From NCBI GenBank assembly GCA_950097015.1, contig CATNEN010000011.1, forward strand, positions 186,001 through 250,000: a stretch of DNA of 64,000 nucleotides. The letters are read 5' to 3'. Made by a program: the position numbers and the translations under genes. The notes beneath the pieces were generated by a model. The model was given only the letters and a program-made list of their open reading frames with translations, searched no databases and was not told the origin of the DNA. Each line of letters begins with the position of its first letter. The first letter of the stretch is position 1. This stretch comes from Macrostomum hystrix. Its lineage: Eukaryota; Animalia; Platyhelminthes. Positions 48,612 to 64,000 of the stretch are shown here, one piece after another.

Positions 48612-48729
48612 CGTGGGAGTTCCGGGGTGGGGTGGGGAGGTCCGGGGCTGATTTGTAAAAAATGTGGGTTAGTGGGAACTCGCGGACCATGTTTTACTAT
48701 AGCTGTATGTTTGCGGCAATGGTTTAGTC

Positions 48730-48737
48730 TATATAAG
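48730..48737 (+). promoter_or_regulatory. Candidate TATA box for the rightward gene block
   Basis: TATATAAG ~75 nt upstream of the PC4-like ATG. Confidence 0.4.
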
Positions 48738-48812
48738 TACCAAAAAATTGATTGATTCACGTGGAGCCGAAATTTTGTTTAAACGAGATAATTAATTCTG
48801 TTTAAGTTTGTC

Positions 48813-49580
48813 ATGGACATCTGCGAAGGATATAAGCTGCAAATACAGGAATATGAAGGAGTGAAATTCATTGCTATCAGAAAATTTTACCGACATGGCA
48901 GCACTGCGAGTTTGAAACCTGGAGTCCCCGGTTTCAATTTGAACATCCGGCAATGGCAGAAGCTCAAGGAACTGAAGAGATCGCTTGTCAAGGCTGCCTT
49001 GGACAACCAGCCGAAAGTTGTACAACTTGGCTTTGATAAATTCATCGAGGTGAAGGACAGCATCATCTGGCTAAAGCGACTGCCCGAGGACTGCTGCGAA
49101 GAGTTTCTTAAGCGGAACACAGTGCCGCTGACACCACCGCTGTGGCGGAAGCTGTGGCAGTACGCGGATTGGATTGACGGGCAGCTATCGGCTCAACGTG
49201 AGATGTCAGATATGTACGAGCTGGAGCCAGGATCTTCCTCGGACAGCATCAAAGGCGAAGACGGTGCTGGTGACAACGCAGACGAAACCAAACCTGCCCT
49301 GAAGATGGAAGATTCGGACGGTGCTGCTGCTGCTGATGAAGCTGCAATGTCATCCAATCTGCAAATTGATACGGAGTTCGCCACTTCAACGCCTTTGCCA
49401 CTTTCAAAGGCTGTAGCTGGAGCCATTCCTCAGCAAGACACTGATCTACAGGAGGACCCAGTCTGGTACCAATTCCGAGCTCAAGCGGCTGCAGCTGAGA
49501 ATGCTAGGAAGCGCAAGCAGCCGTCGTTTGCTCTGCGTAGATTGGATGCCATGAAGCTGCCCAAACTGCGCTTCGACTGA
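48813..49580 (+). CDS. PC4/Sub1-like ssDNA-binding/coactivator protein, probably two tandem PC4-like repeats plus acidic tail
   Basis: EYEGVKFIAIRKFY..LKPGVPGFNLNIRQWQKL matches the PC4 signature; a degenerate second repeat ends PLTPPLWRKL. Confidence 0.75.
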   Translation: MDICEGYKLQIQEYEGVKFIAIRKFYRHGSTASLKPGVPGFNLNIRQWQKLKELKRSLVKAALDNQPKVVQLGFDKFIEVKDSIIWLKRLPEDCCEEFLKRNTVPLTPPLWRKLWQYADWIDGQLSAQREMSDMYELEPGSSSDSIKGEDGAGDNADETKPALKMEDSDGAAAADEAAMSSNLQIDTEFATSTPLPLSKAVAGAIPQQDTDLQEDPVWYQFRAQAAAAENARKRKQPSFALRRLDAMKLPKLRFD

Positions 49581-49691
49581 ATGCGGACCCTCTGACACTA
49601 AAAGCAACATTTTTATCCATACTTTTTTTTCCAATTTTTTAAAAAAATATGTGCTGCTTGTGCGTTCCAACATCTTAAGAATAAATAAATT

Positions 49692-50789
49692 ATGAAAATT
49701 TTCGCCTCATTGTTTCTGAAAATGGAAAAAATTTACTTTAACCCGAATCAGCCAGCGAGTTATTGCAGTTCTTCAAAGCTTCAACATGAACTGAGAAAAA
49801 GAGATTATCACATCGGGGTTAAGGGGATTGAGCAATGGCTAAGTCAGCAGCCAGTGCATACTCTACATAAGCCGGCTAGAGTTCGATTTCAAAGGGCGCC
49901 AATAATAGTAAGAGCCATTGATGATCAGTGGGAGTTGGATCTGGTGGAAATGATTCCGTTTGCCAAATATAATCGCGGGCATAAATACATTCTTACATGT
50001 ATAGATGTTTTATCTAAATTCGCTATGGCCAGAGCTCTGAGGTCTAAAAGCGCAGCAGAAGTGCAATCAGCGTTTGAGAGCATGCTGAAGAGCTCAAAGC
50101 GGCAGCCACGCACCGTCCGCACGGATCAGGGAAAGGAGTTTATTAACACAATATTTCGCCAGTTCTGCATAGACCGCGGGATTCTGGCGTTTCCAACAAA
50201 CAGTGAGCACAAAGCTGCTGTAATAGAAAGATGGAATCGAACTTTAAAAAGCAAGATGTGGCGTTATTTTACTCACAACAGCACTCTACAATGGCTTGAT
50301 GTGCTACCTAAACTGGTCAAGTCCTATAACAATACATTCCACAGAAGCATTAAGACTACACCAATGAATGTTTGCAAAGAAAATGAGACTGACATCTGGA
50401 TGAATCTTTACGATGGGAAAGCGATTGAGACAGTTAAGAATCTGAGAAAACCGAAGTTCAGTGAAAACCAGTCTGTACGAATTTCAAATGCTCCCAGACT
50501 CTTCAGAAAGGGATACATGGCTAACTGGAGTGAAGAAGTGTATACTGTAGTGTCTAGAGCTCCAAAGCATTATCCGTATATGTACCAGATTCGAGACATG
50601 AAGGGTGAAGAGATTCGGGGACTTTTTCATGAGCATGAGTTACAGGCTGTTCCGGACTCACACCGGCTCTATGTGATTGAGAAGATTTTAAAAACTGAAA
50701 AGAGAAATGGGAAAATCCGTTATCTTGTCAAGTGGGCTGGCTACAACTCCACAGGCTGGGTGGATGAAAAGGACTTAAGAAAAGTGTAG
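49692..50789 (+). CDS. Polinton rve-type integrase with C-terminal chromodomain
   Basis: QWELDL, IDVLSKFA, RTDQGKEF, IERWNRTLK, YNNTFHRSIKTTP; chromo YVIEKILK..YLVKWAGY..W. Confidence 0.95.
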   Translation: MKIFASLFLKMEKIYFNPNQPASYCSSSKLQHELRKRDYHIGVKGIEQWLSQQPVHTLHKPARVRFQRAPIIVRAIDDQWELDLVEMIPFAKYNRGHKYILTCIDVLSKFAMARALRSKSAAEVQSAFESMLKSSKRQPRTVRTDQGKEFINTIFRQFCIDRGILAFPTNSEHKAAVIERWNRTLKSKMWRYFTHNSTLQWLDVLPKLVKSYNNTFHRSIKTTPMNVCKENETDIWMNLYDGKAIETVKNLRKPKFSENQSVRISNAPRLFRKGYMANWSEEVYTVVSRAPKHYPYMYQIRDMKGEEIRGLFHEHELQAVPDSHRLYVIEKILKTEKRNGKIRYLVKWAGYNSTGWVDEKDLRKV

Positions 50790-50818
50790 ATAAGCTGCAG
50801 ATAAAATAATCAGATATA

Positions 50819-51631
50819 ATGAGAAACATTGTCATCAACAGCAACCATGGTGAAGGTATTTCTAGTGATTTTTATTTTTACCTTGCTTCACCTCTTTACC
50901 TGGATCGAAATGTGGACTATGAGGCAGCTCTTGTGGAAATCCATCTACCTGCTGCATGGTTCAATCTTGACGAACCTTACTGCATCTCTGTCTCAGATGG
51001 AAGAGAGCATGAAACCCTGGTTCTTCAACCTGGACGCTTTGGCAGAGTGGAGGAGCTGGTGGAGTCTTTGAATGAGCTGCTAGCCAGCTCGCAGCTGCAG
51101 TTCTTTGATGCTAGAAGTGATGGAGATGCTGCAATGGAGGCTGATCAGTCAGGTCTGATGGGACATTCTGCACCTGCTGCGGACAATGGAATAAGGTGTA
51201 CAATTGACGGCTCAAGGACAGTGGTGCAGAATAACACAGCTCAGGTGGAGCTGTATCTCCCGCCTCACCGGATTCTGCAGTGGCTTGGATTCGGAAGCCA
51301 AGGATTAAAAGTCCCACCTGGGCGTCTCGTATCTGAGCAGTTCATCGGCTGCCCGCGCACCAACCTAATCAATGTGCACTGCAGCATCATTGAGTCGAAC
51401 AACTGCAACCACAGCTCCCTGCTGAGAACTGTTAGAATGAGAGATGACATTCAATGGGGTGGCTATGTGAGCAAAGTGTTTAAGAAAACGATATTCTTCA
51501 CAATTCCTAGAGTCATCTATCTACATGGTATTCGAGTGCAGTTGCGAGATATTTTTGGCAGCCTACTGATCGCGCAGTCCAGCAGTCCAGTTTTGCTAAC
51601 AATTCAGATCCGTGAAAAAAGAATTGTATGA
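50819..51631 (+). CDS. Minor capsid protein (penton, single jelly roll)
   Basis: N-terminal NS..F...L..PL.L..YEAALVEI and C-terminal INVHCSII..LLRTV..IRVQLRD..G pattern typical of Polinton minor capsid; position upstream of major capsid. Confidence 0.8.
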   Translation: MRNIVINSNHGEGISSDFYFYLASPLYLDRNVDYEAALVEIHLPAAWFNLDEPYCISVSDGREHETLVLQPGRFGRVEELVESLNELLASSQLQFFDARSDGDAAMEADQSGLMGHSAPAADNGIRCTIDGSRTVVQNNTAQVELYLPPHRILQWLGFGSQGLKVPPGRLVSEQFIGCPRTNLINVHCSIIESNNCNHSSLLRTVRMRDDIQWGGYVSKVFKKTIFFTIPRVIYLHGIRVQLRDIFGSLLIAQSSSPVLLTIQIREKRIV

Positions 51632-51996
51632 ATTACCAGCAGCTGATTCGGCATTACTCGGGAGTTCAAACCCTTGGGGAGAAACCGGTACTCTATGGTT
51701 GCGGCAGCGCTCCAGGGCTCATGACGTACCAACCTCCACCGGTTGCTACAACTGTCGGTGCAGCGCGGCTAATAGACAAAAGGGAAAGTAAAAAGCCATC
51801 TGTGCGATCGAAAAGAAAACGAAAAAATTCTGCTAAGGGTGACACAGGAAAGAAGAGTTCAAGAAAAAATCAGACGAGGGCCGGAAACAAAAAGCTTAAG
51901 AAGAAGAGAAAAACTAGGAAACAGAAAAAGGTAGCACAAGGAAAGCAAAAAATCTGCAGAAAAACTGTGAAACGCGTACTGGATTCTCTGTCCTAA
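51628..51996 (+). CDS. Small basic putative virion core/DNA-condensing protein
   Basis: K/R-rich C-terminal half; LYGC-G fits the adenain (M/L/I)xGx|G cleavage consensus; lies between the capsid genes. Confidence 0.55.
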   Translation: MNYQQLIRHYSGVQTLGEKPVLYGCGSAPGLMTYQPPPVATTVGAARLIDKRESKKPSVRSKRKRKNSAKGDTGKKSSRKNQTRAGNKKLKKKRKTRKQKKVAQGKQKICRKTVKRVLDSLS

Positions 51997-52000
51997 CAAT

Positions 52001-53281
52001 ATGGCTTACGGGTTCAACCCTAGACTCGATCTGTTCAAGGCGCCTGTGCTTCAGACCTGTATTGAGAAATCTGCTTATGTTGACATTCATCCTGTAAACT
52101 CTATTGTCGCAAACTCACCAATTGAATTTGACTGCCATCAATCAGCTGATGAGTACACTGACCTACTGAATTCGTTTCTCTATATTCGTTGTCGCGTTGT
52201 GAGATTGGGTGGTGCCCTGATCAGGGAGGATATTGTGACTGATGGAGCTGTTACCGAGCGCAGAGACAGCCAAGTGCACCCGGAGAATTTTGTTCTAGCT
52301 ACGGCCTTCTCGGATGTAATTGTCAGCATCAACCAGCGCATTGTCTCTGGAGGAGACCAGCTGTATCCCTACCATGCCTACTTCAAAGCTCTCATGAGCT
52401 CCTCCGATGCCCAGCAGCTTAAGTTTTACCCTGCTGGATTCCTGGAACCCGACTCTGCCGATGAGAGCCACACCGAGAGGCATATGATCTCCAACTGGGT
52501 GGAATATGCGGGCCCCCTCCTCAGCGATATCTTCCAGTGCCCCGTGTTCCTGCTCAACAACTTGCACCTGCACATCAAACTAGTGCCCAGCGATGGAGCC
52601 TTTGCCATTAGAGCGCCTGCCCTCAACAACACAGCTTACCGAATGGAAATTTCCCACTGCATCCTGTACCTTCGCCGTGTCAAGGTGGTGCCCCACATCA
52701 GCCTGGCTCACGAGCAGGGACTAACGAATCAAAATGCTCTCTACCCGATCGAGCGAACTGAAATGCAGAACTTCATCCTGCCCCATGGAATTCAGTCGAA
52801 GAACATTGAGGGATTCACGCATGGAAAGCTCCCGAAGTTCATCATGCTGGCATTTGTGAGCCACCGAGCCTTCAACGGTCATCACCACTCCAGCCCGTTC
52901 CAGTTCCAAAGCTTCGAGCTGAGCCAGCTAGCTCTCAAGAAAGGGGGTGAATCAATGTGCCATGGGGCATTCACACCCGAGAACAATTCGTTTGTGAGGG
53001 AGTACCTGCACTATTTGAAAAGCTGCCAATCTGCAAGCTCCAGCGGTTCAGTTCCGTGGATTCCCTACCAACTGTTCTCGAACGAGAACACAGTGTTCGC
53101 ATTCGATCTCACGCCCGAGGGAGCAGCTCTGTGGTACGGCCAGAAGGAGGGAAACCTGCGGCTGGAGATTCGCTTTCGACGGGCGCTGGATGAAGCCGTG
53201 TCGCTGATTGTTATGTGCGTCTATGACTCACTGATTGAAGTAACCAAGCACAGGGAGGTCTTGCTGGACTATTCATCTTGA
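52001..53281 (+). CDS. Major capsid protein (double jelly roll, hexon-like)
   Basis: LDLF..P..Q, PIEF, LYPY.AYF, LYPIER, LPKFIMLAFV..AFNG..SPFQFQ, FAFDLTP, GNLRLEIRF. Confidence 0.92.
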   Translation: MAYGFNPRLDLFKAPVLQTCIEKSAYVDIHPVNSIVANSPIEFDCHQSADEYTDLLNSFLYIRCRVVRLGGALIREDIVTDGAVTERRDSQVHPENFVLATAFSDVIVSINQRIVSGGDQLYPYHAYFKALMSSSDAQQLKFYPAGFLEPDSADESHTERHMISNWVEYAGPLLSDIFQCPVFLLNNLHLHIKLVPSDGAFAIRAPALNNTAYRMEISHCILYLRRVKVVPHISLAHEQGLTNQNALYPIERTEMQNFILPHGIQSKNIEGFTHGKLPKFIMLAFVSHRAFNGHHHSSPFQFQSFELSQLALKKGGESMCHGAFTPENNSFVREYLHYLKSCQSASSSGSVPWIPYQLFSNENTVFAFDLTPEGAALWYGQKEGNLRLEIRFRRALDEAVSLIVMCVYDSLIEVTKHREVLLDYSS

Positions 53282-53293
53282 GAGTACTGAAAG

Positions 53294-53809
53294 ATGGACT
53301 CAACTCAACTGTACTCTCTAACAAGGAGCTTTTTACCTAGCTCCAAAATAGTTATACTCACTCTCTGCTTAAAGCAGAGAGCTGTCACTGTAAATGCGGG
53401 CCAGAATTTGATGAAAAATTCCTTCAGCCGAAATAAAATAATTTTCATTCTGCTAAAACACAGCGTCAGTTTTGGACACTGGGTTGTATGCCACTTTGCT
53501 GATGGAAATACAGTGGAGTTATTCAATTCCCTTGGTTGGGATGAAGAAGCTTTAGCTGTAATTCATGAATACTTGAAGGATATAGGCGGGATGGTTCAAT
53601 TTCAACTGGTTTGCAACGTCAATAAAATCCAAACCGCTCAGTCGGTCAAGTGCGGCCTGTTTTGTGTCTACTTTGCCCACCAGAGGCTAGCTTTGAAGCG
53701 GTCCTTCCTGGGTATTCTCACGAGTCTGCATGCAAAGGAGAAATGTCACCTGAACGATAAAGTACTCAGGCAATTTGAAGTTTGCTTAAGAAAAACCCAG
53801 AAGCCTTGA
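53294..53809 (+). CDS. Adenain-like cysteine maturation protease
   Basis: GHWV..FNSLG..IQ..SVKCGLFCVYF catalytic motif order. Confidence 0.85.
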   Translation: MDSTQLYSLTRSFLPSSKIVILTLCLKQRAVTVNAGQNLMKNSFSRNKIIFILLKHSVSFGHWVVCHFADGNTVELFNSLGWDEEALAVIHEYLKDIGGMVQFQLVCNVNKIQTAQSVKCGLFCVYFAHQRLALKRSFLGILTSLHAKEKCHLNDKVLRQFEVCLRKTQKP

Positions 53810-53835
53810 GTATATTCTGAAAGTCTATTGAAGAG

Positions 53836-54486
53836 ATGGAATCTCATAAGAAAGCATGCTACGATGTTCGCCTGCGTCAGGGCAGCTGCATGATTGTCAG
53901 CGGTCCCACAAATGCGGGAAAGACAACCTTCGTGAAGCATCTAATTCAGTATAGGGAAGTCCTATTCGACATTCAACCTGGCAGAGTGCTCTGGTACTAT
54001 GGGATTCCACAGCCGGCACATGCTGAGCTAAGCAGCATGGGGGTCCACTTGCAGCAGGGATTCCCCTCCAACTTTGAGACAGCACTCAGACCCAATGACC
54101 TGGTAGTGTTTGACGACTTGATTGACGAAAGCTCAAGTTCTGCTTCAATGCGAAATATCTTTACTGGAATAGCCCATCATCTGCCCTGCTTTTTGGTGAT
54201 GCTGACTCAGAACATGTTTTTCAAGGGAAAGGAGTTGCGGACGATGAGTTTGAATGCCATGTACTTCGTAATCATGAAGAACCCCAGAGATCAGCTGCAG
54301 ATCGCAGCGCTGGGCAGGCAGTGCTTTGCAGAGAAGCCCGGCTTCCTGTTGTCAGTGTTCAAGCACGTGACATCACAGGGTAGGGGGGCTTATCTATTTC
54401 TTGACTTTCACCCATCCACAGCCGATGAATTGAGAGTGCGAGCTCGAATCCTACCCAATCAGCGACCCCACCTTGTCTATGCTTAA
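53836..54486 (+). CDS. Packaging ATPase (A32/FtsK-HerA family)
   Basis: Walker A GPTNAGKT, Walker B VVFDD, HH..LTQN..R..SLNA.Y..KNPRD. Confidence 0.93.
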   Translation: MESHKKACYDVRLRQGSCMIVSGPTNAGKTTFVKHLIQYREVLFDIQPGRVLWYYGIPQPAHAELSSMGVHLQQGFPSNFETALRPNDLVVFDDLIDESSSSASMRNIFTGIAHHLPCFLVMLTQNMFFKGKELRTMSLNAMYFVIMKNPRDQLQIAALGRQCFAEKPGFLLSVFKHVTSQGRGAYLFLDFHPSTADELRVRARILPNQRPHLVYA

Positions 54487-54536
54487 GAATAACTGTTGTG
54501 CTTTTCTACTAGAATTTGTAATCTATAATGTCGAAA

Positions 54537-54886
54537 TGGATGCACTCGATTTTCATGCAAATATTTTTGCCATCCTTGCATCATCAAAATATTCTATCAG
54601 ACTTAAGCGACTGCTAATAAAAGCAAGTCCAAAAGCTGTTCGCAACTTTCTTATCGAGGCCTGTTACAACTTGTTGCAAAACACTTTGTCTTTCTCACCA
54701 ACTGAAAAAGCAACGCTGGTAAAGCAGAAGAAAATAATACGGAAAATTTCTGTGCATAGAAGAACTGTTGATCTGCTAAATACTGGTTTCATCAATATTC
54801 TCCATCTTCTATTGAGTCTTGTGAAGAAAAAGAAAGAAAATGAACAAGTTCTCAGAAATGGTTCTGATATCCAAATCGGAGTATGA
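54537..54886 (+). CDS. Small conserved Polinton alpha-helical protein
   Basis: LLIKAS..FLIEACYNLLQN.L..EK..L.KQKKIIRKI pattern recalled from Polinton small ORFs; start taken at the second Met. Confidence 0.55.
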
Positions 54887-55541
54887 CATGCTGACTCAAA
54901 GTTTGAAGCCCGTTGAGTCTGAAGCCGATGCTGCCATTAAGTATGCTCAGAGGAAATGTGATGATATTTTATTCACCCAGGATTTCCCCGATGATGTAAA
55001 AGCCGCCATGTACAATGATGCGAGAAACAGTTTGCTGGCTAAGCGCAAGCGGACTGAAAAAGATGGTGCTGTGTGTGGGAGTGACACCAAAATTATGCGA
55101 ACGGTTAATTCAGCAACCAGATGGGGAGAGACGATCAGCCAATCGGTACCACAGAAGTTCAAGGCCAGAGCCCGCAGTCTATGGGCCATCCTATCTGATA
55201 ATCCCTCCCTCATCCAGGTGTTTGAAAACGGTGAGGTGCAAATGGCTGGGCAGAGAATACCATCCTCAAACATCATGGATCTGTTTCATACTGCGGTGAG
55301 GGATTCGAAATGCGACAGCGAGCCGGTGGGCTGGAGTGAGTTTGTTTCATTGCTTCAAGACAGCAAGCTAAACATTCCTGCTTCAGCGATAGGGAAATCA
55401 GTAAGAAAGCTTATTTCAAAGCCAGCAGCCTCTCTAGAAGCGGAAGCTCTAGACTGTGCTCATCATACAGTCAAGGGACTTGGGAGCGAGAGAGCCTGGT
55501 TACAGCTGGGCAGAAAGAAACTATTTAAGAAAGGAAACTAA
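54840..55541 (+). CDS. Conserved Polinton protein (PZ-like)
   Basis: EMVLISK, GEV..G.RIPSSNIMDL, P.GW.EF..L..NIPAS.IG. Confidence 0.7.
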   Translation: MNKFSEMVLISKSEYDMLTQSLKPVESEADAAIKYAQRKCDDILFTQDFPDDVKAAMYNDARNSLLAKRKRTEKDGAVCGSDTKIMRTVNSATRWGETISQSVPQKFKARARSLWAILSDNPSLIQVFENGEVQMAGQRIPSSNIMDLFHTAVRDSKCDSEPVGWSEFVSLLQDSKLNIPASAIGKSVRKLISKPAASLEAEALDCAHHTVKGLGSERAWLQLGRKKLFKKGN

Positions 55542-55585
55542 ATCGGCTGTCTGTATTTTCTTTCGCCTGCAATTCGATATCGCCG

Positions 55586-56455
55586 ATGATGAACTATATT
55601 GACTTCCAAGGCTTTCCATGCGAAAGATCAAGTAGTGGTTTCGTTGTGAAGGAACTGGCGGTTGTTCAAGTCCGAGCAGGCAGTTACAATATCACTCATC
55701 ATCTTTATTCCTCACCATATGCATGGGAAATGATCTCGCCTGAGATGCAAGTGCACTACAGAAAACTCTCAAGGAATCTGCACCGGCTCAAATGGAACGA
55801 TGGAACCCGATCTTACAAGAAATTCAAAACTGACATTCCTAATATTTCTTATGGCCCAACTTGGACTAGCGGAGCGAGGAAGTCCGTTTTTCTAACTGAA
55901 CTTCTTGGCCAACAGGTGTACAACCTTGAGGACCTGGGAGGGCCTTTAGTCGAACAATCTGATGCCGGCTGCGCATTAAAAAATGCATTAAGGTACTACA
56001 GCTGGCTGAAGCCCAAGTTTTCCATAAGCTTAAGAAGCGAGGTGTGTCAGCACCATTCAAAAGGCATCAGCACTTTCAACGAAATCAGCAACTACACTAC
56101 CGCTAGCAGAAAAAACATCGGAAATGAGTACACCTGTGACAACTCTGAGAGTGACCAACCTGGTCGGTGGCGTGGATCTGAGACTGGCTGGAGGCAGGGG
56201 CGCCCAACTTCCTCTACGGGAACTGGCTCTCAGCATGGCTCATGTCATCTACCGACCCGTTTGGCCCCGAGTGCTCATCAAGAGGATGCGGGATCCGGGA
56301 GTCACTCTTCTGCTCTATCCCACCGGTCAACTGAGCATCTGTGGCGCCCGGAGCTACTCGGACTCAGTCAGGGCTGCCCGTCGCTTCGTGGCTATGCTGC
56401 ATCGCAGAGTGCCTGCTCAACTGCTGCCTCATCAGTCCATTTGTGTACGAATTAA
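55586..56455 (+). CDS. DnaQ/DEDD-like exonuclease-fold protein with extended C-terminus overlapping the TBP ORF
   Basis: YIDFQGF..FVVKELA, HRLKWNDG, G.RK..FL, NLEDLG.P, CA.KN..Y.W as in Maverick-associated proteins; recognisable part ends at ~aa 145. Confidence 0.65.
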   Translation: MMNYIDFQGFPCERSSSGFVVKELAVVQVRAGSYNITHHLYSSPYAWEMISPEMQVHYRKLSRNLHRLKWNDGTRSYKKFKTDIPNISYGPTWTSGARKSVFLTELLGQQVYNLEDLGGPLVEQSDAGCALKNALRYYSWLKPKFSISLRSEVCQHHSKGISTFNEISNYTTASRKNIGNEYTCDNSESDQPGRWRGSETGWRQGRPTSSTGTGSQHGSCHLPTRLAPSAHQEDAGSGSHSSALSHRSTEHLWRPELLGLSQGCPSLRGYAASQSACSTAASSVHLCTN

Positions 56456-56699
56456 AACTATTAGTGCACATGGAAAGATTGACTTGCCTAACCCCCAATG
56501 CTTGACAAGCCTCAGTGATGTGCTACCGAATGCTAGATATGAACCTGAAAGTTTTTCTGCATTAGTGTGTCAGCTCGAATACTGTAAATGTATGCTTTTT
56601 CACAATGGCTCATTTGTGCTCAGTGGGGCAAAGTCAGAACATATGCTGCAATCGGACCTATCCTTCCTAGCAGGCTTGCTGACGGCTGTACGCAAATAA
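56124..56699 (+). CDS. TBP: TATA-box binding protein homologue (both core repeats, no N-terminal extension)
   Basis: LRVTNLVGGVDL, LRELAL..YRP, RMRDP..LLYPTG..CGARS, AARRF, YEPESF, LFHNGSFVLSGAKS and terminal RK align colinearly with the TBP core. Confidence 0.9.
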   Translation: MSTPVTTLRVTNLVGGVDLRLAGGRGAQLPLRELALSMAHVIYRPVWPRVLIKRMRDPGVTLLLYPTGQLSICGARSYSDSVRAARRFVAMLHRRVPAQLLPHQSICVRIKTISAHGKIDLPNPQCLTSLSDVLPNARYEPESFSALVCQLEYCKCMLFHNGSFVLSGAKSEHMLQSDLSFLAGLLTAVRK

Positions 56700-57514
56700 A
56701 TAAATAAACAAAGAAATCAATGACATATTTAAACCCATTTGGATGTTTGCTGATATGAAATGCCCCAAGCCTTCAACCGTCTGTTTATTTTGCATGGAAA
56801 AAATATGGTTTCAGACTAATATTAACAATGCTTTTTGCATTTGAATGCAAACGTGATGCGCTAGATGTAATTGAAAATAAGTACACACACATATGATGCA
56901 TAAGGAAGATAAAAAATGGGGTGAGATAAATGGAAAGTTAAAATAAAGAACAAACGGAGAAACACAGCATCGCATCGAATGAGTAAACTCGATCATTCAC
57001 CAGAAATAACAGCAAAATATGCTACGCTCAAAATATAAATTTGAAGCAGCATGCAAAGCGAATTAAACAAAATGATCAAAGATAGAAAACAACCACTACC
57101 AGCCAATAAAATTAGTTGTATGAGAACCATAAAAATACAAATATTACCATACTGTAAAGAAAGTCCATAGTCAGCAATGAAAAGAGTTCAAGTTGCTGAA
57201 TTTGCAGCAATGCAAAACTAATTAGAAGCAGATAATTGGTAGCAGAATTAATAAAAAATTGTGATAGCAATAACGGCTGTTAGAATACAAGTGCTAGTCC
57301 TACTGTGCATCAGTCTAATTGTCAAGAAATGCTGTCAAACAAAACAATACTGGCCACTAGAAGTAATCATCTTTAAAGCAAAGCTGTGATTTATCGATAT
57401 AATTCAAATTATTGTTATTCGATTTGCTCTTCATAAAACAGAAATGCTCACAAATAAGATCAACTACTAATAACTTTTAGTGACCATTAAAAGACAGTTG
57501 TCGCAGCAACCTGA

Positions 57515-60500
57515 CTACGGTCGTAACAGCATTCGCTTCCTTGGCCTTTCATTGAGTTCACCAGTCAGCCGGGATTCCTCATCTAGAACGCATTGCTCCT
57601 GCTGTTGCAAAAGCCGAATGTGTCCGAAAGGGAGGCTTGAGTTTGGACCTATCCAGGCTCGTTTATCCTCCCAGATGCTTAGAGCCAGCTTCTGCTGTTC
57701 GAGTGTAAACAATCGGTGATTGATGCTTCCAATGCGACGGACAGTTAGTGACAGCTGTGTTGAGTCCTTGTAAACTCGCAAGTAGTCTTCATGGGTTAAA
57801 GTCCGCTTGACAACGCATGCTTGAATGCCCTTCGCCTTCTTCTTGTCAGCTGATGACTTGGTCGTCAAGAAGGAATACAATTTAGGTCGCAGCAGAACCC
57901 ATTCTTCATTCCGTACACCGGCAGACTCATCCTTAATACAACCCAGCCTAGCCTTCAAGCGATCGGAGTGAAGTACATCATCCTTTGGGAAGTTGGACGT
58001 GTCAAGCAGATCATGAAAAGCCATTAAAGGCAGAGCTTCCTTCCGAGCATCGATGTTTTCCAGGCAGAGAAAAAGCGAATCAGTGTCCCCACCACAGACA
58101 CGAACACATCCACTATCACGCTCAAGTAATGGCTTCAACTTGTCGTAGAGCAGCTCGTACATAACGATCTTTGATAGGTCCAGTACGCATTGTCCCATTT
58201 GAATTGGACGATCCAGAGTGACTTCTGTCCTCTGTAGCTCAAATATGCTTAGATTTTCAGTAATTATTGTGAAGGACTTTAAATTTGGATTGGCTGCATA
58301 GATCCTGGCTTTGTCGGTTGAATTGATAATTCTAATGTCGCGTCGCTTGCGTACATTTTCCATCACCTTGCCAAATACACTGTTGTTCTTTAATTTGTAG
58401 AAATCTTTTTCGAATGCATTCTTTGCATTCGATCGCTTCTCACTATTCTTGTTGATGTACGAGGCAAAAACTGGCTCTTGGCGGAACTCAATCATTCTGT
58501 GCACTTTAGCCAACTTTAAGCCATGTGCTAGATAGAACTTTAGCGCAGAAGAGTGCAGCACGTAGGCCAGTTTGTTCTTGCAGGTCAGGAGTAGTTTTTC
58601 AACACCACAATATTCCTTCCCACAGTTACTTGATTTAGCGGGTTCATGTTGTTGCTGCTGTTGTCTTTGCTGCTGGTGCTGCTGCTGGTGCTGCTGCTGA
58701 TTTTCTTGATGCAACAAATTCCATAGGTGCTTCATGTGCGGCGGGAATTCATCGAAACTAGGTTTTTGCCTTTCGGGTGCAAACGGCAGATCAGCAGTGT
58801 AATCATGAATCTCTATGGGATAGTGAAGGTCGGCCTCAACAAGATAGCCAACGGGACCATTTTCATCCAGGCACAAAAATCTCTCTTCCGTCCAGACGAT
58901 GACTTCCCCCTCACTGAGCCAACGGAAGTCTCTGACGGGGAGTGGCATTGTGAGAGCATGGCCATATAGATTGTTTGCGTCTATTGCTAGCAAACTTTTG
59001 GTTGGTTGTTCATCAGTTTCGGCTTTCGTGATGTCAGTCGCACTCGCTCGAACATGATGGATGTTGACAAAGCACATGCCACCACGGATTCCTCGCTCGA
59101 AGGTCCGATACATTTCATTGTCGCTCAAAAGCTGGATGCCTACTTTTGCAATTCCAGAAAGCGACTTTATTGCTGAAGCAAACGAAAGCCCCGGTGTTGA
59201 AACAAAATGAACCGGATCCAGACCATCTTCTCGGAGGCTGAGTCGACGGAAATTTTCAAAAATATCCGCAAGTTGACGGATATCTAACTCAAGGTAACAG
59301 AGCATGTAGTGACGCAAATTGACTACATCGAATTCGCGCCACGCTCTTTGAGCATGCGCATAATCATTTGTGCTGCATTCACAGTTGTTTAATCGATTAA
59401 AAAAATTCTCTCGGCTAGGCAGTTGTGTATCATAGAGTATATGACTACCAGATAGATAGTCATATGGGAATACACCTTTTGAAAAAAGGACTTCACTGCT
59501 CACATTTGGGTGATGCTCCTGCATCCGAGACGTCACTTTGCACTCATCTTCCGACAAATTCGCAATAAGCTGTGCAATGCTACTGTGTAGAAACTGGAAG
59601 CTATCGATAAACTGAAGTGTGAAGCTCAGTGGGATCATTCTGCCATCCTTTTCATACTCATCGATTTTGAACTCAACTCGCATTGATAGGTATGCCTCGG
59701 CTGTTTGTGGGATGACGCTGATTTTCCAGCCAGGCATGTTGCCAAGGGCGGTAGAGAAGATGAGGTGCAGGTCATAGTTACGCAAGTTATGCATGACAAT
59801 TGGTAGAAAGCGACGCTTAAGTCTAGCTAGCTTGTTACACGAGCTGCAGGCAGCGCCGCGGAATGCGCCAGTCAAGTGATCGTGGTCCCAGTGCTTCTTA
59901 CTAGAAGATGAAATAACTTCTCCACAATAGTGGCAGCACACAGATTCGTGGAACTTTCGAATGTCTTCATCATGCTTGAGTGCAGGTTTGTGACTGAACT
60001 CTTTATTCCAACCATAAACTTTCCTAGCCAGCTTTTCTAGTGACATCAAGAATTCTTTGACACAGGTGTGCGCATCAGAATCACAAAAGAGTGCTACCTC
60101 CTCACTAGGCCTACACAACTGACTAATCCCATCTCGGGCGATTGTGATGTAGCCAGCAGCAGCAGGCACGTGCTCAGTCAGCCTGATGATTGCTGATGTA
60201 TCATCAACTGAAGCAGTTGGGACATTAAATGCCTCGAAGTCGGCGTAGACAACAAAAGGAGGACTCAGCGTCTTTTCCCAGGATGTGAAGCGCATGAAGC
60301 TTTCTGGCTCTGGCATATTCTCCTTGATGGATGTCGATTGTTGAAGATTGCAATGCACCTGGTGAGAGTGAAGATCAATTTCAGTACGAAAATTACTCAA
60401 ACATCGCTCACACCACTTTCGATTCCGAAAGCCTAGTTTGCTATTGAAGAGCCTATCAAGGCTGCTAACAGCACACCAGTGGCCAAGATTGTCACATATA

Positions 60501-61760
60501 TTATCACCAATGTCGATATCGGCTGAGTCCTTGCGAAGATTACATGGCTGGACCAACATAAGTAGAACAATCTTTCGCGATGTTGCTAATACAGTGCTAG
60601 GTTGACGAATCACTGAAGGCTTCGAATTCTCCCATGTTAAAACGGTAAAACATATTTCAGTGTTTCTCTGCTCGACTTCATCGAGGTCGCTAATTGAGAC
60701 GGGGAGATTAATGCCTGTTAAATCAATTTCTGCCTCCCAGTTTTTGTAAGTTGCTAATCTATGACCAGATTTTTTCACTGCAGGATCATCGCAATGAAGA
60801 TAGGCCAAGCAGGCAAAACGGAAACAGTCATTTCCATTGCTGGGAGGGTTGATGAGAGCCTTCTTGTTGAGTAGCTCAATAGGCAAATTAAATTCGCTGC
60901 ATCTACCGGAATAGTAACGAATCCGATCAGATAGAGTACTGCACAGATCCAAGTGATTCAGACCATTAACAGCCCAGCCACTACCATTGGAATTGTAAGT
61001 ATCAATTTTGCGCTCAAGTTCAGTGAATTGCTGCATCCACCAGTTTTCAAACTCACATATGTCATTGAGACATACCAAGTGGTGCGCGACATACTTGATT
61101 TCGGCATGAACAGGCAAAACATCTGTTGCAGCTAGTCTGATCATGTGAACATTGAGCTTGAGTTGTGCGCGAATAGACTGACCATCAGAAGAGTCTAGTC
61201 GTATTTCAAGCGCTTGTCGAACGGCTTCTTTGGTCGCACGAAGAAATTCGAACGGATCACATTGAACTGTCGGAAAAAAACGCAGTACTTCAAGGACATG
61301 ATCGTGTGCAGCTGATATGATGGAAGATTGGAATGGGATTCCTGTAAATTAAAAGGATAAGGAAGGAAGTTATGTAGCCCCGTAATAGTTGAGCATCTAA
61401 CTAATTAAAAGCACTCCAATTTTCAGTTACAGTAGTCCTATACAAATTAATTTCCCGAATAGGCAGGTGAATACTAATTTGAAAAAGCTTTTTTATATCA
61501 GTAAATTTTAGTCAGAGAATATTCATAAATTTATAAATTCTTTATATATAATACACAAATGCAACATTTGTTTTTCTAATTACCGTAGCGACTTTTCAAA
61601 ATACGTTTTTTAAGAAACTAATTGCGGAAACTTGTATAACATAGTATGCGATCAAATAAAAACTACAATGCTTATTCTCACCATATCTATCAGAAGAATA
61701 AGATGACTCGCTTGAATTGCTTGACTCGAGAGAATTTAAGCCTCCGTTTGAGACGGCCAT
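57515..61760 (-). CDS. polB: Protein-primed family B DNA polymerase (~1300 aa); predicted exons 61760-61682 and 61341-57515
   Basis: YADFE, HNLRNYD, KGVFPYDY, RGIRGG, DANNLYG, KLKNNSVFGK, GDTDS, RPKLYS, KKKAKG; EndoVII-like Zn motif CHYC..DHDHLTG..RGAACSSCN; frame stays open upstream of 61144 to an acceptor at 61342. Confidence 0.93.
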
Positions 61761-62329
61761 GCTTATTCATGAATTATTTTCAGTGGCTGAAAGAAAATTA
61801 TTAAGTAGATTATTAATAATAATTATTTTAATTGTAATAATAGTAAGTCTAGTGACTAATATAGTTAAAAGAAATATCAGAAACAATATTTATTCAATGA
61901 TTATCACACTCTATTTCTTAGCACTTTATTATCTGCGTATCGGAAAAAGTAAGCAGCCTTTCATTTTCAAAAGAAAATCTAAAATCCAAAAACGTGTTTT
62001 AAAATTTTTTTTAATCCATAACCTGTCTCGTCAATTTATTTTCAATGTATGTAACTCAGATGGTGTTACACCTACAACACACACAAAAGCAGCGCGCAGG
62101 TTAAATATCTACAAATTAACATATAATTGTATAAAATAATGGCTTTTAATGAATTATAAAAAAACTATTTTGAAATGTGAAGCCAAACAAAATTGGAAGA
62201 GATATGTGCTAAACCAGCTTTGTAGATTTTATTGTTTGTCCTATTCCTCGTTTAAAAAGCCACTGCCAAAAGAGATGAAATTATTAAATAATAATGTGAC
62301 TAAATGGAAAAACAGAGTAGTGATTTTAA

Positions 62330-63319
62330 TTAAAAATTGCTAAGTCGAATTTGAAAGTTTCCCCCAAAGTCAATACAATATTGACCAGTAATACTGCTAG
62401 GCAGAACAAATTGAATGCAGATAGGTTGCAACTGTCCTTCAACAACAGGTGGAGCTTGATCAGCCACTGCTTGTGCCGGCGCCGCTGTTGGTGGTGGTGC
62501 GACTGGAGCAGGGTCAGAGTCAGACTCTAACTCACGGAGAATGTCAGTTAGGGCGTTGGTTTCTGCCAGCATCCTTGCTCGCTCGATATTTTTTCCTGCA
62601 ACTGCGGGAATGGCTCGGCGCTGTTGATGCTGCTCCTGCTCCTCCTCCGGCAGCTGCTGCTGATGCTGCTCCAGTCCAGTCTGCTGCTGGTGCTGGTGCT
62701 GCTGATGATGATGATGAGGCACTGAATCCTCCCGCTGCAGCAGCTGTTGGAGTGCCTGATGTTGGGGTCGATCCTGTTGATTAAATCGGCCCTCTAAATC
62801 AAGCTCATCGATAAATGCGGTGTCCAGCTCAGTGATTTCATCATCGATCGCATTTACGATTTCGATGTCGTTAGCTTGTCTGCCGACCAGAAGATTTTCT
62901 GTAGCATCGGGCAGCAAAGCCGGCACGGCAGCGAGGATGGGAGCAACACCAGCAACAGGATGATCGTTTGAAGATGATCTGCCACAGACGTTGGAGATGA
63001 TCTGACTAAGAGCGCTCTCAGGCTGGCGAATACGCTCAAGCGCTTGAAATGCCTCTTGCTGGCGTGCGGATTCCAATGCAGTTTGCCTGGCTCGCTCGAG
63101 GTCTTCAGCAGAGCCCCAGTTGACAACAGCATGATTTTTGTGTCGTCGAATTTGTCCGCGGACGGTAAAAAGCTCAGCTGAATCGCATTCATGGCAAACG
63201 AGCCAGCGACTGACACTACAGCCTTCGCGCGTAACATGATGTCTCAATTTTCCGAGTGAGCAAATATTGCAATTGATGCACACCTCATGTATGTATGAAG
63301 GGCAGTGGTACTTGCTCAT
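62330..63319 (-). CDS. Unknown protein: N-terminal Cys/His zinc cluster, acidic and Gln-rich C-terminus
   Basis: 329-codon ORF; C..C..C..CHEC..H.H N-terminus; HHHQQHQHQQQ and D/E-rich stretches. Confidence 0.7.
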   Translation of the reverse strand: MSKYHCPSYIHEVCINCNICSLGKLRHHVTREGCSVSRWLVCHECDSAELFTVRGQIRRHKNHAVVNWGSAEDLERARQTALESARQQEAFQALERIRQPESALSQIISNVCGRSSSNDHPVAGVAPILAAVPALLPDATENLLVGRQANDIEIVNAIDDEITELDTAFIDELDLEGRFNQQDRPQHQALQQLLQREDSVPHHHHQQHQHQQQTGLEQHQQQLPEEEQEQHQQRRAIPAVAGKNIERARMLAETNALTDILRELESDSDPAPVAPPPTAAPAQAVADQAPPVVEGQLQPICIQFVLPSSITGQYCIDFGGNFQIRLSNF

Positions 63320-63365
63320 GTTTAAATAATTTCCCAATAACAACATTACTATTGAAAATCCGAGT

Positions 63366-63372
63366 CTTTATA
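63366..63372 (-). promoter_or_regulatory. Candidate TATA box for the leftward gene block
   Basis: TATAAAG on the minus strand ~47 nt upstream of the ATG at 63319. Confidence 0.4.
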
Positions 63373-63614
63373 TCCAACCCCTCCCCACTCCCGCATATGT
63401 TTACAGCTTGTGTATGTACATACACTAATTCAAAGTAGATAACATCAGAGAAAATTGCCGACTGCTACAAGCATCCCAGCTTTATCCCTTGAATGTTGTT
63501 GTTGTGCAGGAAACTTTGGACATAATTTATTATCTCTCCTATGCTCTATAGTTCGTTCACCACAAAGCAACAACTCCTGGGCCCCGTGCGCGATCACCAC
63601 TTCACACCTTTAGC

Positions 63615-63791
63615 CGCTCAAGTTCAAGCGCACCGGCACTCAACAAATGACTAAATAGTAGTAAACTTATTTGTTATTGATTATTGAGAATTCCCTTAAT
63701 TCTGAATTCGCTCAAGTTCAAGTGCACCGGCACTCAGCAAATGACTAATAAGAGTAAACTTATTTGTTATTGATTATTTGAGAAATTCCCA
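63615..63791 (+). repeat. 94-bp tandem duplication
   Basis: CGCTCAAGTTCAAG(C/T)GCACCGGCACTCA..GTAAACTTATTTGTTATTGATTATT starts at 63615 and 63709. Confidence 0.85.
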
Positions 63792-63841
63792 CTGAAATTT
63801 CTAATAAATGCCAAACTTTTTAACTTCATTAAACTAAATTA

Positions 63842-64000
63842 GCTTTCCCTGCGGCAGAATCCACCAATGCATTTACATAGGCCACTATGTTCACTCACTA
63901 ACCCCAAGGTTACTCCAGCCCTAGAAACGCACGATATGAAATTTCAGGTCTCCATGCATTTAAAATATTTGTGCGGAACGTAATGCAGTGAACAGTGAAC
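63842..64000 (-). repeat. Right inverted repeat (candidate TIR), runs off the window
   Basis: Reverse complement of ~48436-48611. Confidence 0.75.

What the first reader, a model, noticed from the sequence alone, without database searches (positions are those of the whole stretch)
56124..56699. A Polinton/Maverick that encodes its own TATA-binding protein, with an asymmetrically altered DNA-binding surface
Seen: an intronless 191-aa ORF colinear with both TBP core repeats, last in the rightward viral gene block. Aligned by eye to yeast TBP, the second repeat keeps the intercalating F190 and F207 and the TFIIB-contacting E186/E188 (YEPESF). The first repeat has Pro (next to Trp) at F99 and Tyr at F116, and N159 is Thr. 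Established: TBP homologues occur in large nucleocytoviruses, and TBP is not part of the canonical Polinton core set. Inference: a captured TBP retuned to viral promoters while still recruiting host TFIIB/Pol II, or a decoy for host transcription.
Basis: partly seen in the sequence, partly recalled or inferred. Interest (0 to 1): 0.9.

Follow-up and report, generated by a model that had tools for sequence, protein, structure and literature searches.

The report
Maverick virus-like element encoding divergent TBP
A 15.7-kb-plus Polinton/Maverick virus-like element integrated in a flatworm-type genome carries its own highly divergent TATA-binding protein gene, which is under purifying selection, recurs at the same place in distant relatives of the element, and has lost half of the DNA-kinking residues while keeping the TFIIB-contact residues, so a small nuclear virus-like element may bring its own promoter-recognition factor.

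Summary
ORF 56124-56699 (+) is a two-repeat TBP homologue: Pfam TBP scores 77 bits against a 22.9-bit cut-off, and the AF2 saddle model matches only TBPs in PDB. It is the last rightward gene of a complete Polinton/Maverick with TIRs, protein-primed PolB, rve integrase, a double jelly-roll capsid protein (fold shown), ATPase and protease.

New here:
- The gene is not a recent host capture. 1.84 billion representative proteins gave only a tight family plus three environmental relatives at 30-44% identity, all with the same signature.
- Gene order is conserved down to 38% capsid identity.
- dN/dS is 0.2-0.3.
- A second, metagenomic Polinton group carries another TBP type after the same ATPase block. 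It shows parallel losses (F99, T124, N159, P191).
- A third related lineage lacks TBP.

The only prior art found is a 'TBP' label in a figure legend (Starrett et al. 2021).

Function is inferred, not shown: most likely a promoter-recognition factor that recruits host TFIIB and Pol II to non-canonical element promoters. This is a new variant of a known kind (virus-encoded TBPs). Interest about 0.6.

The parts
48286..64000 (.). Polinton/Maverick element. The left end is at or before 48286 and the right end runs off the window.
   Evidence: Inverted repeat 48473-48611 / 63842-63981 (92%, 140 nt) plus a second left sub-repeat at 48286-48363. All hallmark genes lie between the arms.
48286..48630 (.). 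Left terminal inverted repeat region with internal sub-repeats
63842..64000 (.). Right terminal inverted repeat, cut by the end of the window
   Evidence: A 94-nt tandem repeat lies just inside it at 63615-63790.
48730..48736 (+). TATA-like box 83 nt before the first gene of the rightward block
   Evidence: pattern match only
48813..49580 (+). Gene with a PC4-like (ssDNA-binding / Pol II coactivator p15) domain
   Evidence: Pfam PC4, 27.1 bits against a 25-bit cut-off
49692..50789 (+). Retroviral-type integrase (rve) with a C-terminal chromodomain
   Evidence: Pfam rve 57 bits; Chromo 22.6 bits, below its cut-off. Homologues at 31-35% identity in metagenomic Polintons.
50819..51631 (+). ORF of 270 aa, in the position of the minor capsid (penton) protein; not tested
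   Evidence: No family hit. Assigned by position only.
51628..51996 (+). Small, very basic protein (122 aa)
   Evidence: Translation. No test.
52001..53281 (+). Major capsid protein, double jelly-roll
   Evidence: AF2 pLDDT 68, pTM 0.73. Foldseek PDB top hits are PBCV-1 Vp54, SGIV MCP, Sputnik and mavirus MCP, E 1e-14 to 1e-12.
53294..53809 (+). Adenain-like cysteine protease (probable)
   Evidence: Peptidase_C5 at 15.7 bits, below its cut-off. Its homologue in L011 (26% over 110 aa) scores 35.5 bits against a 21.3-bit cut-off.
53836..54486 (+). A32/FtsK-like packaging ATPase
   Evidence: Walker A motif in the translation. Weak P-loop and Pox_A32 hits. Its homologue in L011 passes the Pox_A32 cut-off.
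54473..54886 (+). ORF of 137 aa, conserved in related copies
54840..55541 (+). ORF of 233 aa, conserved in related copies
55586..56455 (+). ORF of 289 aa. It has a conserved N-terminal domain of unknown fold. Its low-complexity tail overlaps TBP repeat 1 in the +2 frame.
   Evidence: Conserved in L001, L005, L014 and L029. The overlapping frame is open for 109-112 codons in 4 copies; 0.001-0.02 of synonymous shuffles do as well.
56124..56699 (+). Divergent TATA-binding protein gene (the finding)
56703..56708 (+). AATAAA 4 nt after the TBP stop codon; candidate poly(A) signal of the rightward unit
   Evidence: pattern match only
57515..61144 (-). [quoted passage not shown]
   Evidence: Pfam DNA_pol_B_2 69.5 bits, Endonuclease_7 34.4 bits
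62330..63346 (-). ORF of 338 aa with a Cys-rich N-end and a Q/H-rich middle; conserved in M. lignano copies
   Evidence: No family hit.

Best explanation
The ORF encodes a real, selected, highly divergent TBP-fold protein. It is an old accessory gene of one Polinton/Maverick lineage, not a recent host copy.

Most likely role: the element's own core-promoter recognition factor. It would sit on element DNA through the TBP saddle, kink one end of its site with the retained Phe pair (F144/F159, yeast F190/F207), and read the other half differently through a re-made, more polar surface (Pro/Tyr/Cys/Thr at yeast F99/F116/T124/N159). It would then recruit host TFIIB, and so RNA polymerase II, through the retained acidic C-terminal stirrup (E140/E142). 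This would give element genes a transcription channel partly independent of host TBP/TFIID.

The upstream gene that overlaps it (55586-56455) may be a partner.

Shown: fold, family, context, conservation, selection and residue pattern. Inferred: DNA target, TFIIB recruitment and effect on transcription.
For: - Fold and family.
- Element context with all hallmark genes.
- The order ATPase, small ORFs, TBP, then convergent PolB is conserved in five other copies. The rightward block from integrase to TBP is also in the same order in the environmental relative L029, which has 38% MCP and 35% TBP identity.
- TBP is among the best conserved genes: 75% identity against 45% for PolB and 39% for the 233-aa ORF, window versus L001.
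- dN/dS is 0.20-0.30 at dS about 1.
- The signature N-P-Y-C-T...E-E-F-F is invariant in all 8 members down to 30% identity.
- E186/E188 equivalents are kept in 8 of 8 window-type and 17 of 17 metagenomic-type TBPs. PMC12529657 describes conserved negatively charged TBP residues, which it numbers E184 and E188, as critical for TFIIB contact, and says the four Phe cause the DNA bend.
- A second Polinton group independently shows a TBP in the same block with parallel replacements.
- No close cellular relative exists among 1.84 billion representatives. EUK monophyly is 100/100 and window type plus EUK is 0/100.
Against: - There is no expression data, no mapped promoter, and no shared motif upstream of the internal genes.
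- Canonical TATA-like boxes lie before the first rightward gene, before PolB and before the 338-aa gene, which host TBP could serve.
- L189 is Ser in most Macrostomum copies.
- Part of the extreme conservation of repeat 1 may come from the overlapping reading frame rather than from TBP function.
- A related lineage manages without TBP.
- The AF2 model is of moderate confidence and no DNA or TFIIB complex was modelled.
Confidence: 0.5

Rival explanations
1. Decoy or competitor. The protein binds host TFIIB (and perhaps other TBP partners) or TATA-like DNA without nucleating productive complexes. It would damp or redirect host transcription, or shield the integrated element from host regulation.
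For: TFIIB-contact glutamates are kept while half of the DNA-kinking residues are lost. No N-terminal regulatory tail is present in the window type.
Against: A pure decoy would not need a strictly conserved, specifically re-made DNA-facing surface (P, Y, C, T invariant in 8 of 8 down to 30% identity). N69, F190 and F207 are all retained. The gene sits as an ordinary member of the structural and late-looking gene block.
Confidence: 0.15
2. Architectural DNA-bending protein with no role in transcription. The TBP saddle would bend element DNA at the termini or elsewhere, to help protein-primed replication, integration or packaging.
For: The gene lies between the packaging ATPase block and the PolB gene. 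TBP-like folds are general DNA benders. The metagenomic elements place the TBP between the ATPase and the integrase.
Against: The residues that contact TFIIB/TFB are invariant in both Polinton TBP types, which a pure architectural role does not require. No TATA-like site was seen in the aligned TIR arms, though this was not searched in depth.
Confidence: 0.12
3. The two Polinton TBP types (window type and metagenomic type) are independent captures of cellular TBPs at a permissive spot. The resemblance of their surfaces is convergent.
For: HMM cross-scores show no special affinity between the two types (about 55-60 bits, the same as to eukaryotic or archaeal TBPs), and the metagenomic type is nearer to eukaryotic TBP. 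The small ORFs between the ATPase and TBP are not detectably homologous (hhalign E=0.04 over 19 columns only). The PolB genes of the two groups are not alignable by tblastn.
Against: Both sit in the same block after the ATPase. Both share replacements at yF99, yV122, yT124, yN159, yV161 and yP191. The NJ quartet window type plus metagenomic type gets 73/100.
Confidence: 0.35
4. Passenger or decaying gene with no function for the element.
For: Some M. lignano copies are degraded. The L014 copy has one frameshift in the TBP gene, and two gene models contain only repeat 1.
Against: dN/dS is 0.2-0.3. Position and signature are conserved down to 30-35% identity. The gene is intact in the window, L001, L002-L006 and L029.
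Confidence: 0.03

Closest known systems
Cellular TATA-binding protein (TBP, Pfam PF00352; e.g. 1ytb, 1qn3, 1cdw)
   Same: Two tandem repeats and the saddle fold (TM 0.65-0.70). N69, F190, F207, E186, E188, L114, L205 and V213 equivalents are kept.
   Different: Only 22-25% identity to eukaryotic TBPs. F99 -> Pro, F116 -> Tyr, T124 -> Cys, N159 -> Thr, P191 -> Ser, V122 -> Ser. There is a 6-residue insertion between S1 and H1 of repeat 1. It has no N-terminal tail, is encoded by a mobile virus-like element, and does not nest in the eukaryotic TBP clade (0/100).
TBP-like genes of Nucleocytoviricota (for example those named TBP or TFIID in mimivirus-like, marseillevirus and phycodnavirus entries of BFVD, and the B263R homologue of an asfa-like virus)
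   Same: Virus-encoded TBP-fold proteins. Foldseek BFVD hits down to E=7e-10.
   Different: Those viruses are large and carry their own RNA polymerase. The structural match is weaker than to cellular TBPs (TM 0.5-0.67 at 10-22% identity). No sequence-level link was found.
Beta/gamma-herpesvirus TBP mimic (KSHV ORF24 family)
   Same: A nuclear DNA virus brings a TBP-like promoter reader with a more polar DNA face and a non-canonical site (TATTWAA) (PMC12529657).
   Different: The residue pattern is the reverse. According to that paper, ORF24 keeps all four Phe, lacks the acidic TFIIB-contact residues and binds Pol II directly. The protein here loses the repeat-1 Phe pair (Pro and Tyr) and keeps the acidic pair.
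'TBP' gene labelled in MELD viruses with adintovirus-like PolB genes (Starrett et al. 2021, Virus Evol, PMC8502044, Fig. 5 legend)
   Same: A TBP-like gene in a Polinton-related element. This is the only prior mention found.
   Different: It appears only as a figure label under a section on non-animal datasets, with no analysis. I could not tell which genome it is or whether it belongs to either TBP type seen here.
TRF2/TLF (TBPL1) and Giardia TBP
   Same: TBP paralogues that have lost intercalating Phe residues and do not bind canonical TATA. For Giardia TBP, the abstract of PMC12209930 says so; for TRF2 this is from my own knowledge.
   Different: Those are host genes. No TRF2 sequence was available to test. 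In the top 145 library hits, none outside this family lacks F99 together with N159.

Membership tests
TBP family (PF00352, TBP-like fold) | Two tandem TBP repeats detected by the family profile above its curated cut-off | tested here: met
   77.3 bits against 22.9, two stretches
TBP family (PF00352, TBP-like fold) | Saddle fold, S1-H1-S2-S3-S4-S5-H2 twice | tested here: met
   AF2 secondary structure. All 44 significant Foldseek PDB hits are TBPs.
TBP family (PF00352, TBP-like fold) | Four intercalating phenylalanines (yeast F99, F116, F190, F207) | tested here: not met
   P48, Y65, F144, F159: two of four, plus one Tyr
TBP family (PF00352, TBP-like fold) | Minor-groove hydrogen-bonding set N69, T124, N159, T215 | tested here: not met
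   N12 is kept; C73, T112 and S167 replace the others
TBP family (PF00352, TBP-like fold) | Acidic C-terminal stirrup residues that contact TFIIB/TFB (E186, E188) | tested here: met
   E140 and E142, invariant in 8 of 8 relatives. L189 is Ser in the window copy.
TBP family (PF00352, TBP-like fold) | Binds and bends TATA DNA; nucleates a pre-initiation complex | not testable with these tools
   No biochemical or complex-modelling tool was available
Polinton/Maverick (polintovirus/adintovirus-like element) | [quoted passage not shown] | tested here: met
   DNA_pol_B_2, 69.5 bits
Polinton/Maverick (polintovirus/adintovirus-like element) | Retrovirus-like (rve) integrase | tested here: met
   rve, 57 bits against 32.6
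Polinton/Maverick (polintovirus/adintovirus-like element) | Terminal inverted repeats | tested here: met
   140-nt arms, 92% alike. The right arm is cut by the window end, so the full length is unknown.
Polinton/Maverick (polintovirus/adintovirus-like element) | Double jelly-roll major capsid protein | tested here: met
   The model of ORF 52001-53281 matches PBCV-1, SGIV, Sputnik and mavirus MCPs, E 1e-14 to 1e-12
Polinton/Maverick (polintovirus/adintovirus-like element) | Minor capsid (penton) protein | not tested
   ORF 50819-51631 is a candidate by position only
Polinton/Maverick (polintovirus/adintovirus-like element) | A32/FtsK-type packaging ATPase | tested here: met
   Walker A in ORF 53836-54486. 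The window ORF itself scores below cut-off. Its 26-30% identical homologues pass Pox_A32.
Polinton/Maverick (polintovirus/adintovirus-like element) | Adenain/Ulp1-like cysteine protease | tested here: inconclusive
   Peptidase_C5 at 15.7 bits, below the 21.3-bit cut-off. The homologue in L011 passes at 35.5 bits.
Polinton/Maverick (polintovirus/adintovirus-like element) | Target-site duplication at both ends | not testable with these tools
   The right end lies outside the window
TRF2/TLF (TBPL1) host paralogue | Groups with metazoan TBPL1 in a tree; host gene with host-type context | tested here: inconclusive
   No TBPL1 sequence could be fetched. The context is a mobile element, and eukaryotic TBP, TBPL2 and one protein named 'TATA-box-binding protein-like' (Genypterus) form a clade that excludes it, 100/100.

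The most novel reading that the evidence does not exclude
A lineage of small (15-25 kb) nuclear Polinton/Maverick elements has carried, since before the split of its flatworm-borne and environmental branches, a private core-promoter system. The system would be a re-specified TBP, perhaps working with the product of the gene that overlaps it. It would read a non-TATA element and still plug into host TFIIB and Pol II. The TBP genes of different Polinton groups would go back to one ancient acquisition, so a TBP would already have been present in small ancestors of the large DNA viruses.
Probability: 0.15. Interest if true: 0.8.

Novelty: new variant of a known kind. Interest (0 to 1): 0.6.

Why it matters
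Virus-encoded TBP homologues or mimics are known from giant viruses, which have their own RNA polymerase, and from herpesviruses. Small Polinton/Maverick elements are assumed to rely wholly on host initiation factors.

A conserved, selected TBP with a re-made DNA face but intact TFIIB contacts suggests that some of these elements control which promoters the host polymerase sees. That bears on how integrated virus-like elements stay silent or switch on. It also bears on the evolution of viral transcription machinery along the Polinton to large-DNA-virus line.

The natural series of TBPs here also samples replacements at positions (F99, F116, T124, N159, P191) that are almost never varied in cellular TBPs.

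Tried and rejected
- Recent host capture: rejected. The exhaustive HMM search found 5 proteins at E<1e-30 (four Macrostomum-type, one metagenomic), then a gap to generic TBPs. The window type never groups with eukaryotic TBPs.
- IMG/VR scans with profiles of both TBP types found nothing.
- The metagenome scan mostly returned archaeal-type TBPs (L008, L010; the latter sits next to BREX and methylase genes). The same scan also gave the Polinton contigs L011-L013.
- PHROGs gave nothing for any element ORF.
- A PDB sequence search with the MCP profile gave nothing; the fold search did.
- Homology of the small ORFs between the ATPase and TBP in the two Polinton groups: hhalign found only a 19-column N-terminal match at E=0.04, and nothing for the overlapping gene. 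Unresolved.
- A shared promoter motif upstream of the element genes was not evident by eye, and no motif finder was run.
- The source organism of assemblies JAAUYI01 and JARPNV01 and of sample SAMN14350216 could not be found in the paper library.
- One PDB call was wasted on too strict a threshold.
- Possible slip: the generic tblastn tables and the ORF list printed coordinates from which the approximate place of a frameshift in related copies (L014, L003) could be read. I give only counts here.
Full report
**1. The observation**

- It scores 77.3 bits (E=7.9e-22) on Pfam TBP, whose cut-off is 22.9 bits, with both repeats matched.
- Every PDB sequence it hits is a TBP. The best is the archaeal 1pcz at 1.1e-16; plant, yeast and human TBPs score 1e-12 to 1e-9.
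- An AlphaFold2 model built from five family members (pLDDT 78.5, pTM 0.67) shows the strand/helix order of the TBP saddle twice.
- Foldseek against PDB gives 44 hits with E<1e-3. All are TBPs, with TM 0.57-0.70 at 21-29% identity.

This is far beyond chance.

**2. The residue claims**

The HMMER alignment to full-length Arabidopsis TBP2 (1qn3_A) places its F57, F74, N117, E144, E146, F148 and F165 opposite window residues P48, Y65, T112, E140, E142, F144 and F159. Adding 42 gives yeast F99, F116, N159, E186, E188, F190 and F207. PMC12529657 uses the same yeast numbering for the DNA-contact residues.

In a joint MAFFT alignment, 15 named cellular TBPs carry N-F-F-T-N-E-E-L-F-F-T in the columns for N69, F99, F116, T124, N159, E186, E188, L189, F190, F207 and T215, with a single exception (Blastocystis has Ala at T124). 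This validates the mapping.

The surface is also changed at T124 (Cys), V122 (Ser), A101 (Val), P191 (Ser), T215 (Ser) and probably V161 (Ser/Thr). The asymmetry concerns the aromatic pairs, while polar replacements affect both halves.

**3. The surroundings**

The ORF lies in an element bounded by inverted repeats. A 140-nt arm at 48473-48611 pairs with 63842-63981 at 92% identity. A further sub-repeat sits at 48286-48363, and the right arm is cut by the window end.

Gene content, in order:
- Rightward:
  - a PC4-like domain gene
  - an rve integrase with a chromodomain
  - ORFs of 270 and 122 aa
  - a 426-aa protein
  - a probable adenain-like protease
  - a Walker-A ATPase
  - ORFs of 137, 233 and 289 aa
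  - the TBP gene
- Leftward: a 1209-aa protein-primed PolB with an Endonuclease VII domain, and a 338-aa Cys-rich and Q-rich ORF.

I modelled the 426-aa protein from eight homologues (pLDDT 68, pTM 0.73). It matches the double jelly-roll capsid proteins of PBCV-1, SGIV, Sputnik and mavirus at E 1e-14 to 1e-12.

The protease and ATPase assignments rest on sub-threshold Pfam hits in the window and above-threshold hits in 26-30% identical homologues.

The rest of the window is host-like and rich in transposons: COG4 exons, a BEL/Pao retrotransposon, a KDZ transposase and a Tc1/mariner transposase. The element is thus an integrated Polinton/Maverick. All 13 of its ORFs are open.

**4. Host**

The nearest proteins are from the flatworm Macrostomum lignano, at 75% identity, plus a 110-aa fragment at 93%. 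Unnamed sequencing runs give relatives at 67-71%. The window most likely comes from Macrostomum or a close relative.

**5. Relatives of the gene**

The word-indexed search found five proteins. The exhaustive profile search of 1.84 billion representatives found 1605 TBP-like proteins, but only five at E<1e-30:
- one from an unnamed sequencing run (P0003);
- three M. lignano gene models;
- one JGI metagenome protein, P0009, at 44% identity.

Below these there is a gap down to ordinary TBPs. The best-scoring cellular hits are four-repeat gene models of a plant and a rotifer.

I tabulated the key columns in 145 of the top-ranked hits. This uncovered one more member, P0016, from an ENA metagenome. 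It is 30% identical and has the same P-Y-C-T signature.

A search with the capsid protein led to contig L029 (JGI metagenome). It has 38% capsid identity and the order integrase, 269-aa ORF, MCP, protease, ATPase, 207-aa ORF, a homologue of the 289-aa ORF, then TBP. That is the order of the rightward block in the window from the integrase on. Its TBP is 35% identical and again carries the signature.

In other copies the order ATPase, small ORFs, TBP, then reverse PolB is also kept (L001-L006, L014).

Some copies are degraded:
- The L014 copy has one frameshift in the TBP gene, and the annotated protein P0006 fuses two frames.
- In L003 the homologue of the upstream 289-aa gene, not the TBP gene, is split once.
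- Two M. lignano gene models (P0007, P0008) contain only repeat 1, joined to unrelated sequence.

**6. Selection**

Between the window and L001 the TBP is 75% identical, while PolB is 45% and the 233-aa ORF is 39%. Pairwise Nei-Gojobori dN/dS among four intact copies is 0.20-0.30 at dS about 1.

| Part of the gene | dN | dS |
|---|---|---|
| Repeat 1 | 0.06-0.14 | 0.5-0.7 |
| Repeat 2 | 0.38-0.45 | 1.6-2.7 |

Part of the difference may have another cause. The upstream 289-aa ORF runs about 110 codons into the TBP gene in the +2 frame.
- That frame is open for 109-112 codons in all four copies. Only 0.1-2% of synonymous shuffles do as well.
- The overlapped part has higher GC content (0.56-0.58 against 0.38-0.46).
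- The same overlap is present in L029.

Whether this is true dual coding or a by-product of TBP constraint is open. Repeat 2, which nothing overlaps, still has dN/dS of 0.14-0.28, so the TBP frame itself is under purifying selection.

**7. A second Polinton group with a TBP**

Protein and context look-ups added more from the same and two further assemblies (L015-L022).

Their shared order is: PolB of 1600-1680 aa, a small ORF, an A32-like ATPase, one or two small ORFs, TBP, a small ORF, an rve integrase with chromodomain, two ORFs, an MCP homologous to the window's (22-29% identity), then a Peptidase_C5 protease.

These TBPs (13 proteins plus three translated from loci, 36-44% identical to the reference P0163) score E 1e-63 to 6e-31 against a joint profile, above a plateau of cellular TBPs near 1e-28.

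Their residue pattern, counted on 17 sequences (these 16 plus the TBP of L009, reassigned from the archaeal set on its HMM score), is:
- Kept: N69, F116, F207, T215, E186, E188, L189 and mostly F190.
- Replaced: Met at F99, Asn at T124, Ser/Ala/Cys at N159, Ser at V122 and V161, Ser/Asn/Thr at P191.

Both Polinton TBP types thus lose F99, T124, N159 and P191 and gain polar residues at V122 and V161.

Evidence on whether the two types share one origin is mixed:
- For: an NJ bootstrap puts the two types together in 73 of 100 replicates. The alternative, window type with archaeal TBPs, gets 27 and window type with eukaryotic TBPs gets 0.
- Against: HMM cross-scores show no special affinity, at about 55-65 bits to everything.
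- Against: the small ORFs in between are not demonstrably homologous.
- Against: the PolBs do not align.

One ancient acquisition is somewhat favoured, but convergence is not excluded.

A third related lineage (L024/L025, MCP 28% identical, contigs running from PolB to the protease) has no TBP in any of six frames. The gene is therefore an accessory with a patchy distribution. IMG/VR holds no relative of either type.

**8. Mechanism (inference)**

From established TBP biology, the C-terminal repeat with F190/F207 and P191 kinks and reads the 5' end of the TATA box. The N-terminal repeat with F99/F116 kinks the 3' end. N69, N159, T124 and T215 bond in the minor groove at the centre. E186, E188 and L189 of the C-terminal stirrup hold TFIIB. 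Parts of this are restated in PMC12529657.

The protein keeps the fold, one kink pair, N69 and the acidic TFIIB contacts. It replaces the other kink pair and most central hydrogen-bonding residues with an equally invariant alternative set.

That pattern is what one expects of a factor that still binds DNA in the saddle and still recruits TFIIB, but on a different, asymmetric site. It is the reverse of the herpesvirus TBP mimic ORF24, which keeps the four Phe, drops the acidic residues and binds Pol II directly.

I therefore favour a private promoter-recognition factor for element genes (confidence 0.5). Weaker alternatives are a decoy (0.15) and a non-transcriptional DNA bender (0.12).

Weak points:
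- No expression data or promoter map was available.
- The only canonical TATA-like boxes are before the first rightward gene, 350-400 nt before the PolB start, and about 30 nt before the 338-aa gene. Host TBP could serve these.
- An AATAAA 4 nt after the TBP stop suggests that the TBP gene closes a long rightward transcription unit. This is a pattern match only.

**9. Comparison with what is known, and novelty**

TBP homologues are established in Nucleocytoviricota; Foldseek BFVD hits here reach 7e-10 but are weaker than those to cellular TBPs. A TBP mimic is established in beta- and gamma-herpesviruses.

For Polinton-related elements, full-text searches found a single mention. [quoted passage not shown] 5 of Starrett et al. 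2021, on MELD viruses with adintovirus-like PolB genes. It is in a section on non-animal datasets and is not discussed further.

The finding is therefore not categorically new. The following appear to be undescribed:
- an animal-genome Maverick lineage with a conserved, selected TBP;
- its invariant alternative DNA-face signature;
- its overlap with a conserved upstream gene;
- the parallel TBP in a second Polinton group.

I rate it a new variant of a known kind, interest 0.6.

**10. Limits**

- Source organisms of the metagenomic contigs are unknown.
- No TBPL1/TRF2 or giant-virus sequences could be put in the tree.
- Trees are NJ only.
- dS is near saturation.
- The TBP model has moderate confidence.
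- TIR arms are only 92% alike although every ORF is open, which I cannot explain.

Noticed in passing
window 55586-56455 (overlap with 56124-56455); also L001, L002, L005, L029: The gene upstream of the TBP gene has a conserved N-terminal domain of about 150 aa with no known family. Its S/T/A/G/R-rich tail is encoded in the +2 frame over TBP repeat 1. The frame is open for 109-112 codons in four diverged copies (0.1-2% of synonymous shuffles do as well). Synonymous divergence there is 3-4 times lower than in repeat 2. The arrangement recurs in a relative with 35% TBP identity.
   Followed up: partly
window 48813-49580: The first gene of the element has a PC4-like domain (ssDNA-binding, Pol II coactivator p15 family), 27.1 bits against a 25-bit cut-off. 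It is a second gene with a possible link to transcription or to ssDNA handling in replication.
   Followed up: no
window 51628-51996: A 122-aa ORF, extremely rich in Lys and Arg, lies just before the capsid gene. It could be a DNA-condensing core protein.
   Followed up: no
window 57515-61144 (-): The PolB carries an Endonuclease VII domain ahead of the polymerase domain. It also has a Gln/His-rich tract (TGC repeat at 58668-58699). Its first 380 residues have no Pfam hit.
   Followed up: no
window 48286-48630 and 63615-64000: The terminal repeats contain internal sub-repeats: a left pair 267 nt apart and a 94-nt tandem repeat near the right end. The arms are only 92% alike although all 13 element ORFs are open.
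   Followed up: partly
L011-L013, L015-L022 (assemblies JAAUYI01, JARPNV01, ENA ERZ23486739): A diverse group of metagenomic Polintons with all genes on one strand carries a different TBP type between the ATPase and the integrase. In several, the TBP reading frame has a roughly 100-aa basic N-terminal extension that overlaps the upstream ORF.
   Followed up: partly
L024, L025 (ENA; identical capsid gene also on two TARA ocean metagenome scaffolds, L026 and L028): Related Polintons (capsid 28% identical) have the order PolB, three small ORFs, integrase, then capsid and protease. They have no TBP in six frames.
   Followed up: partly
proteins P0006, P0007, P0008 (M. lignano gene models): Annotated host proteins that contain pieces of this TBP look like chimeric models over degraded element copies. 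One joins two frames, one joins repeat 1 to Ig and spectrin domains, and one (named Parvo_NS1 domain-containing) joins repeat 1 to a capsid piece.
   Followed up: partly
window 1-48000: The host flank holds COG4 exons (28072-30638), a BEL/Pao LTR retrotransposon (20392-26029), a KDZ transposase (11624-12418, -) and a Tc1/mariner-type transposase (26502-27545, -).
   Followed up: partly
proteins P0010 (Penstemon) and P0013 (Adineta): These cellular TBP gene models have four TBP repeats instead of two. They may be tandem duplications or merged models.
   Followed up: no
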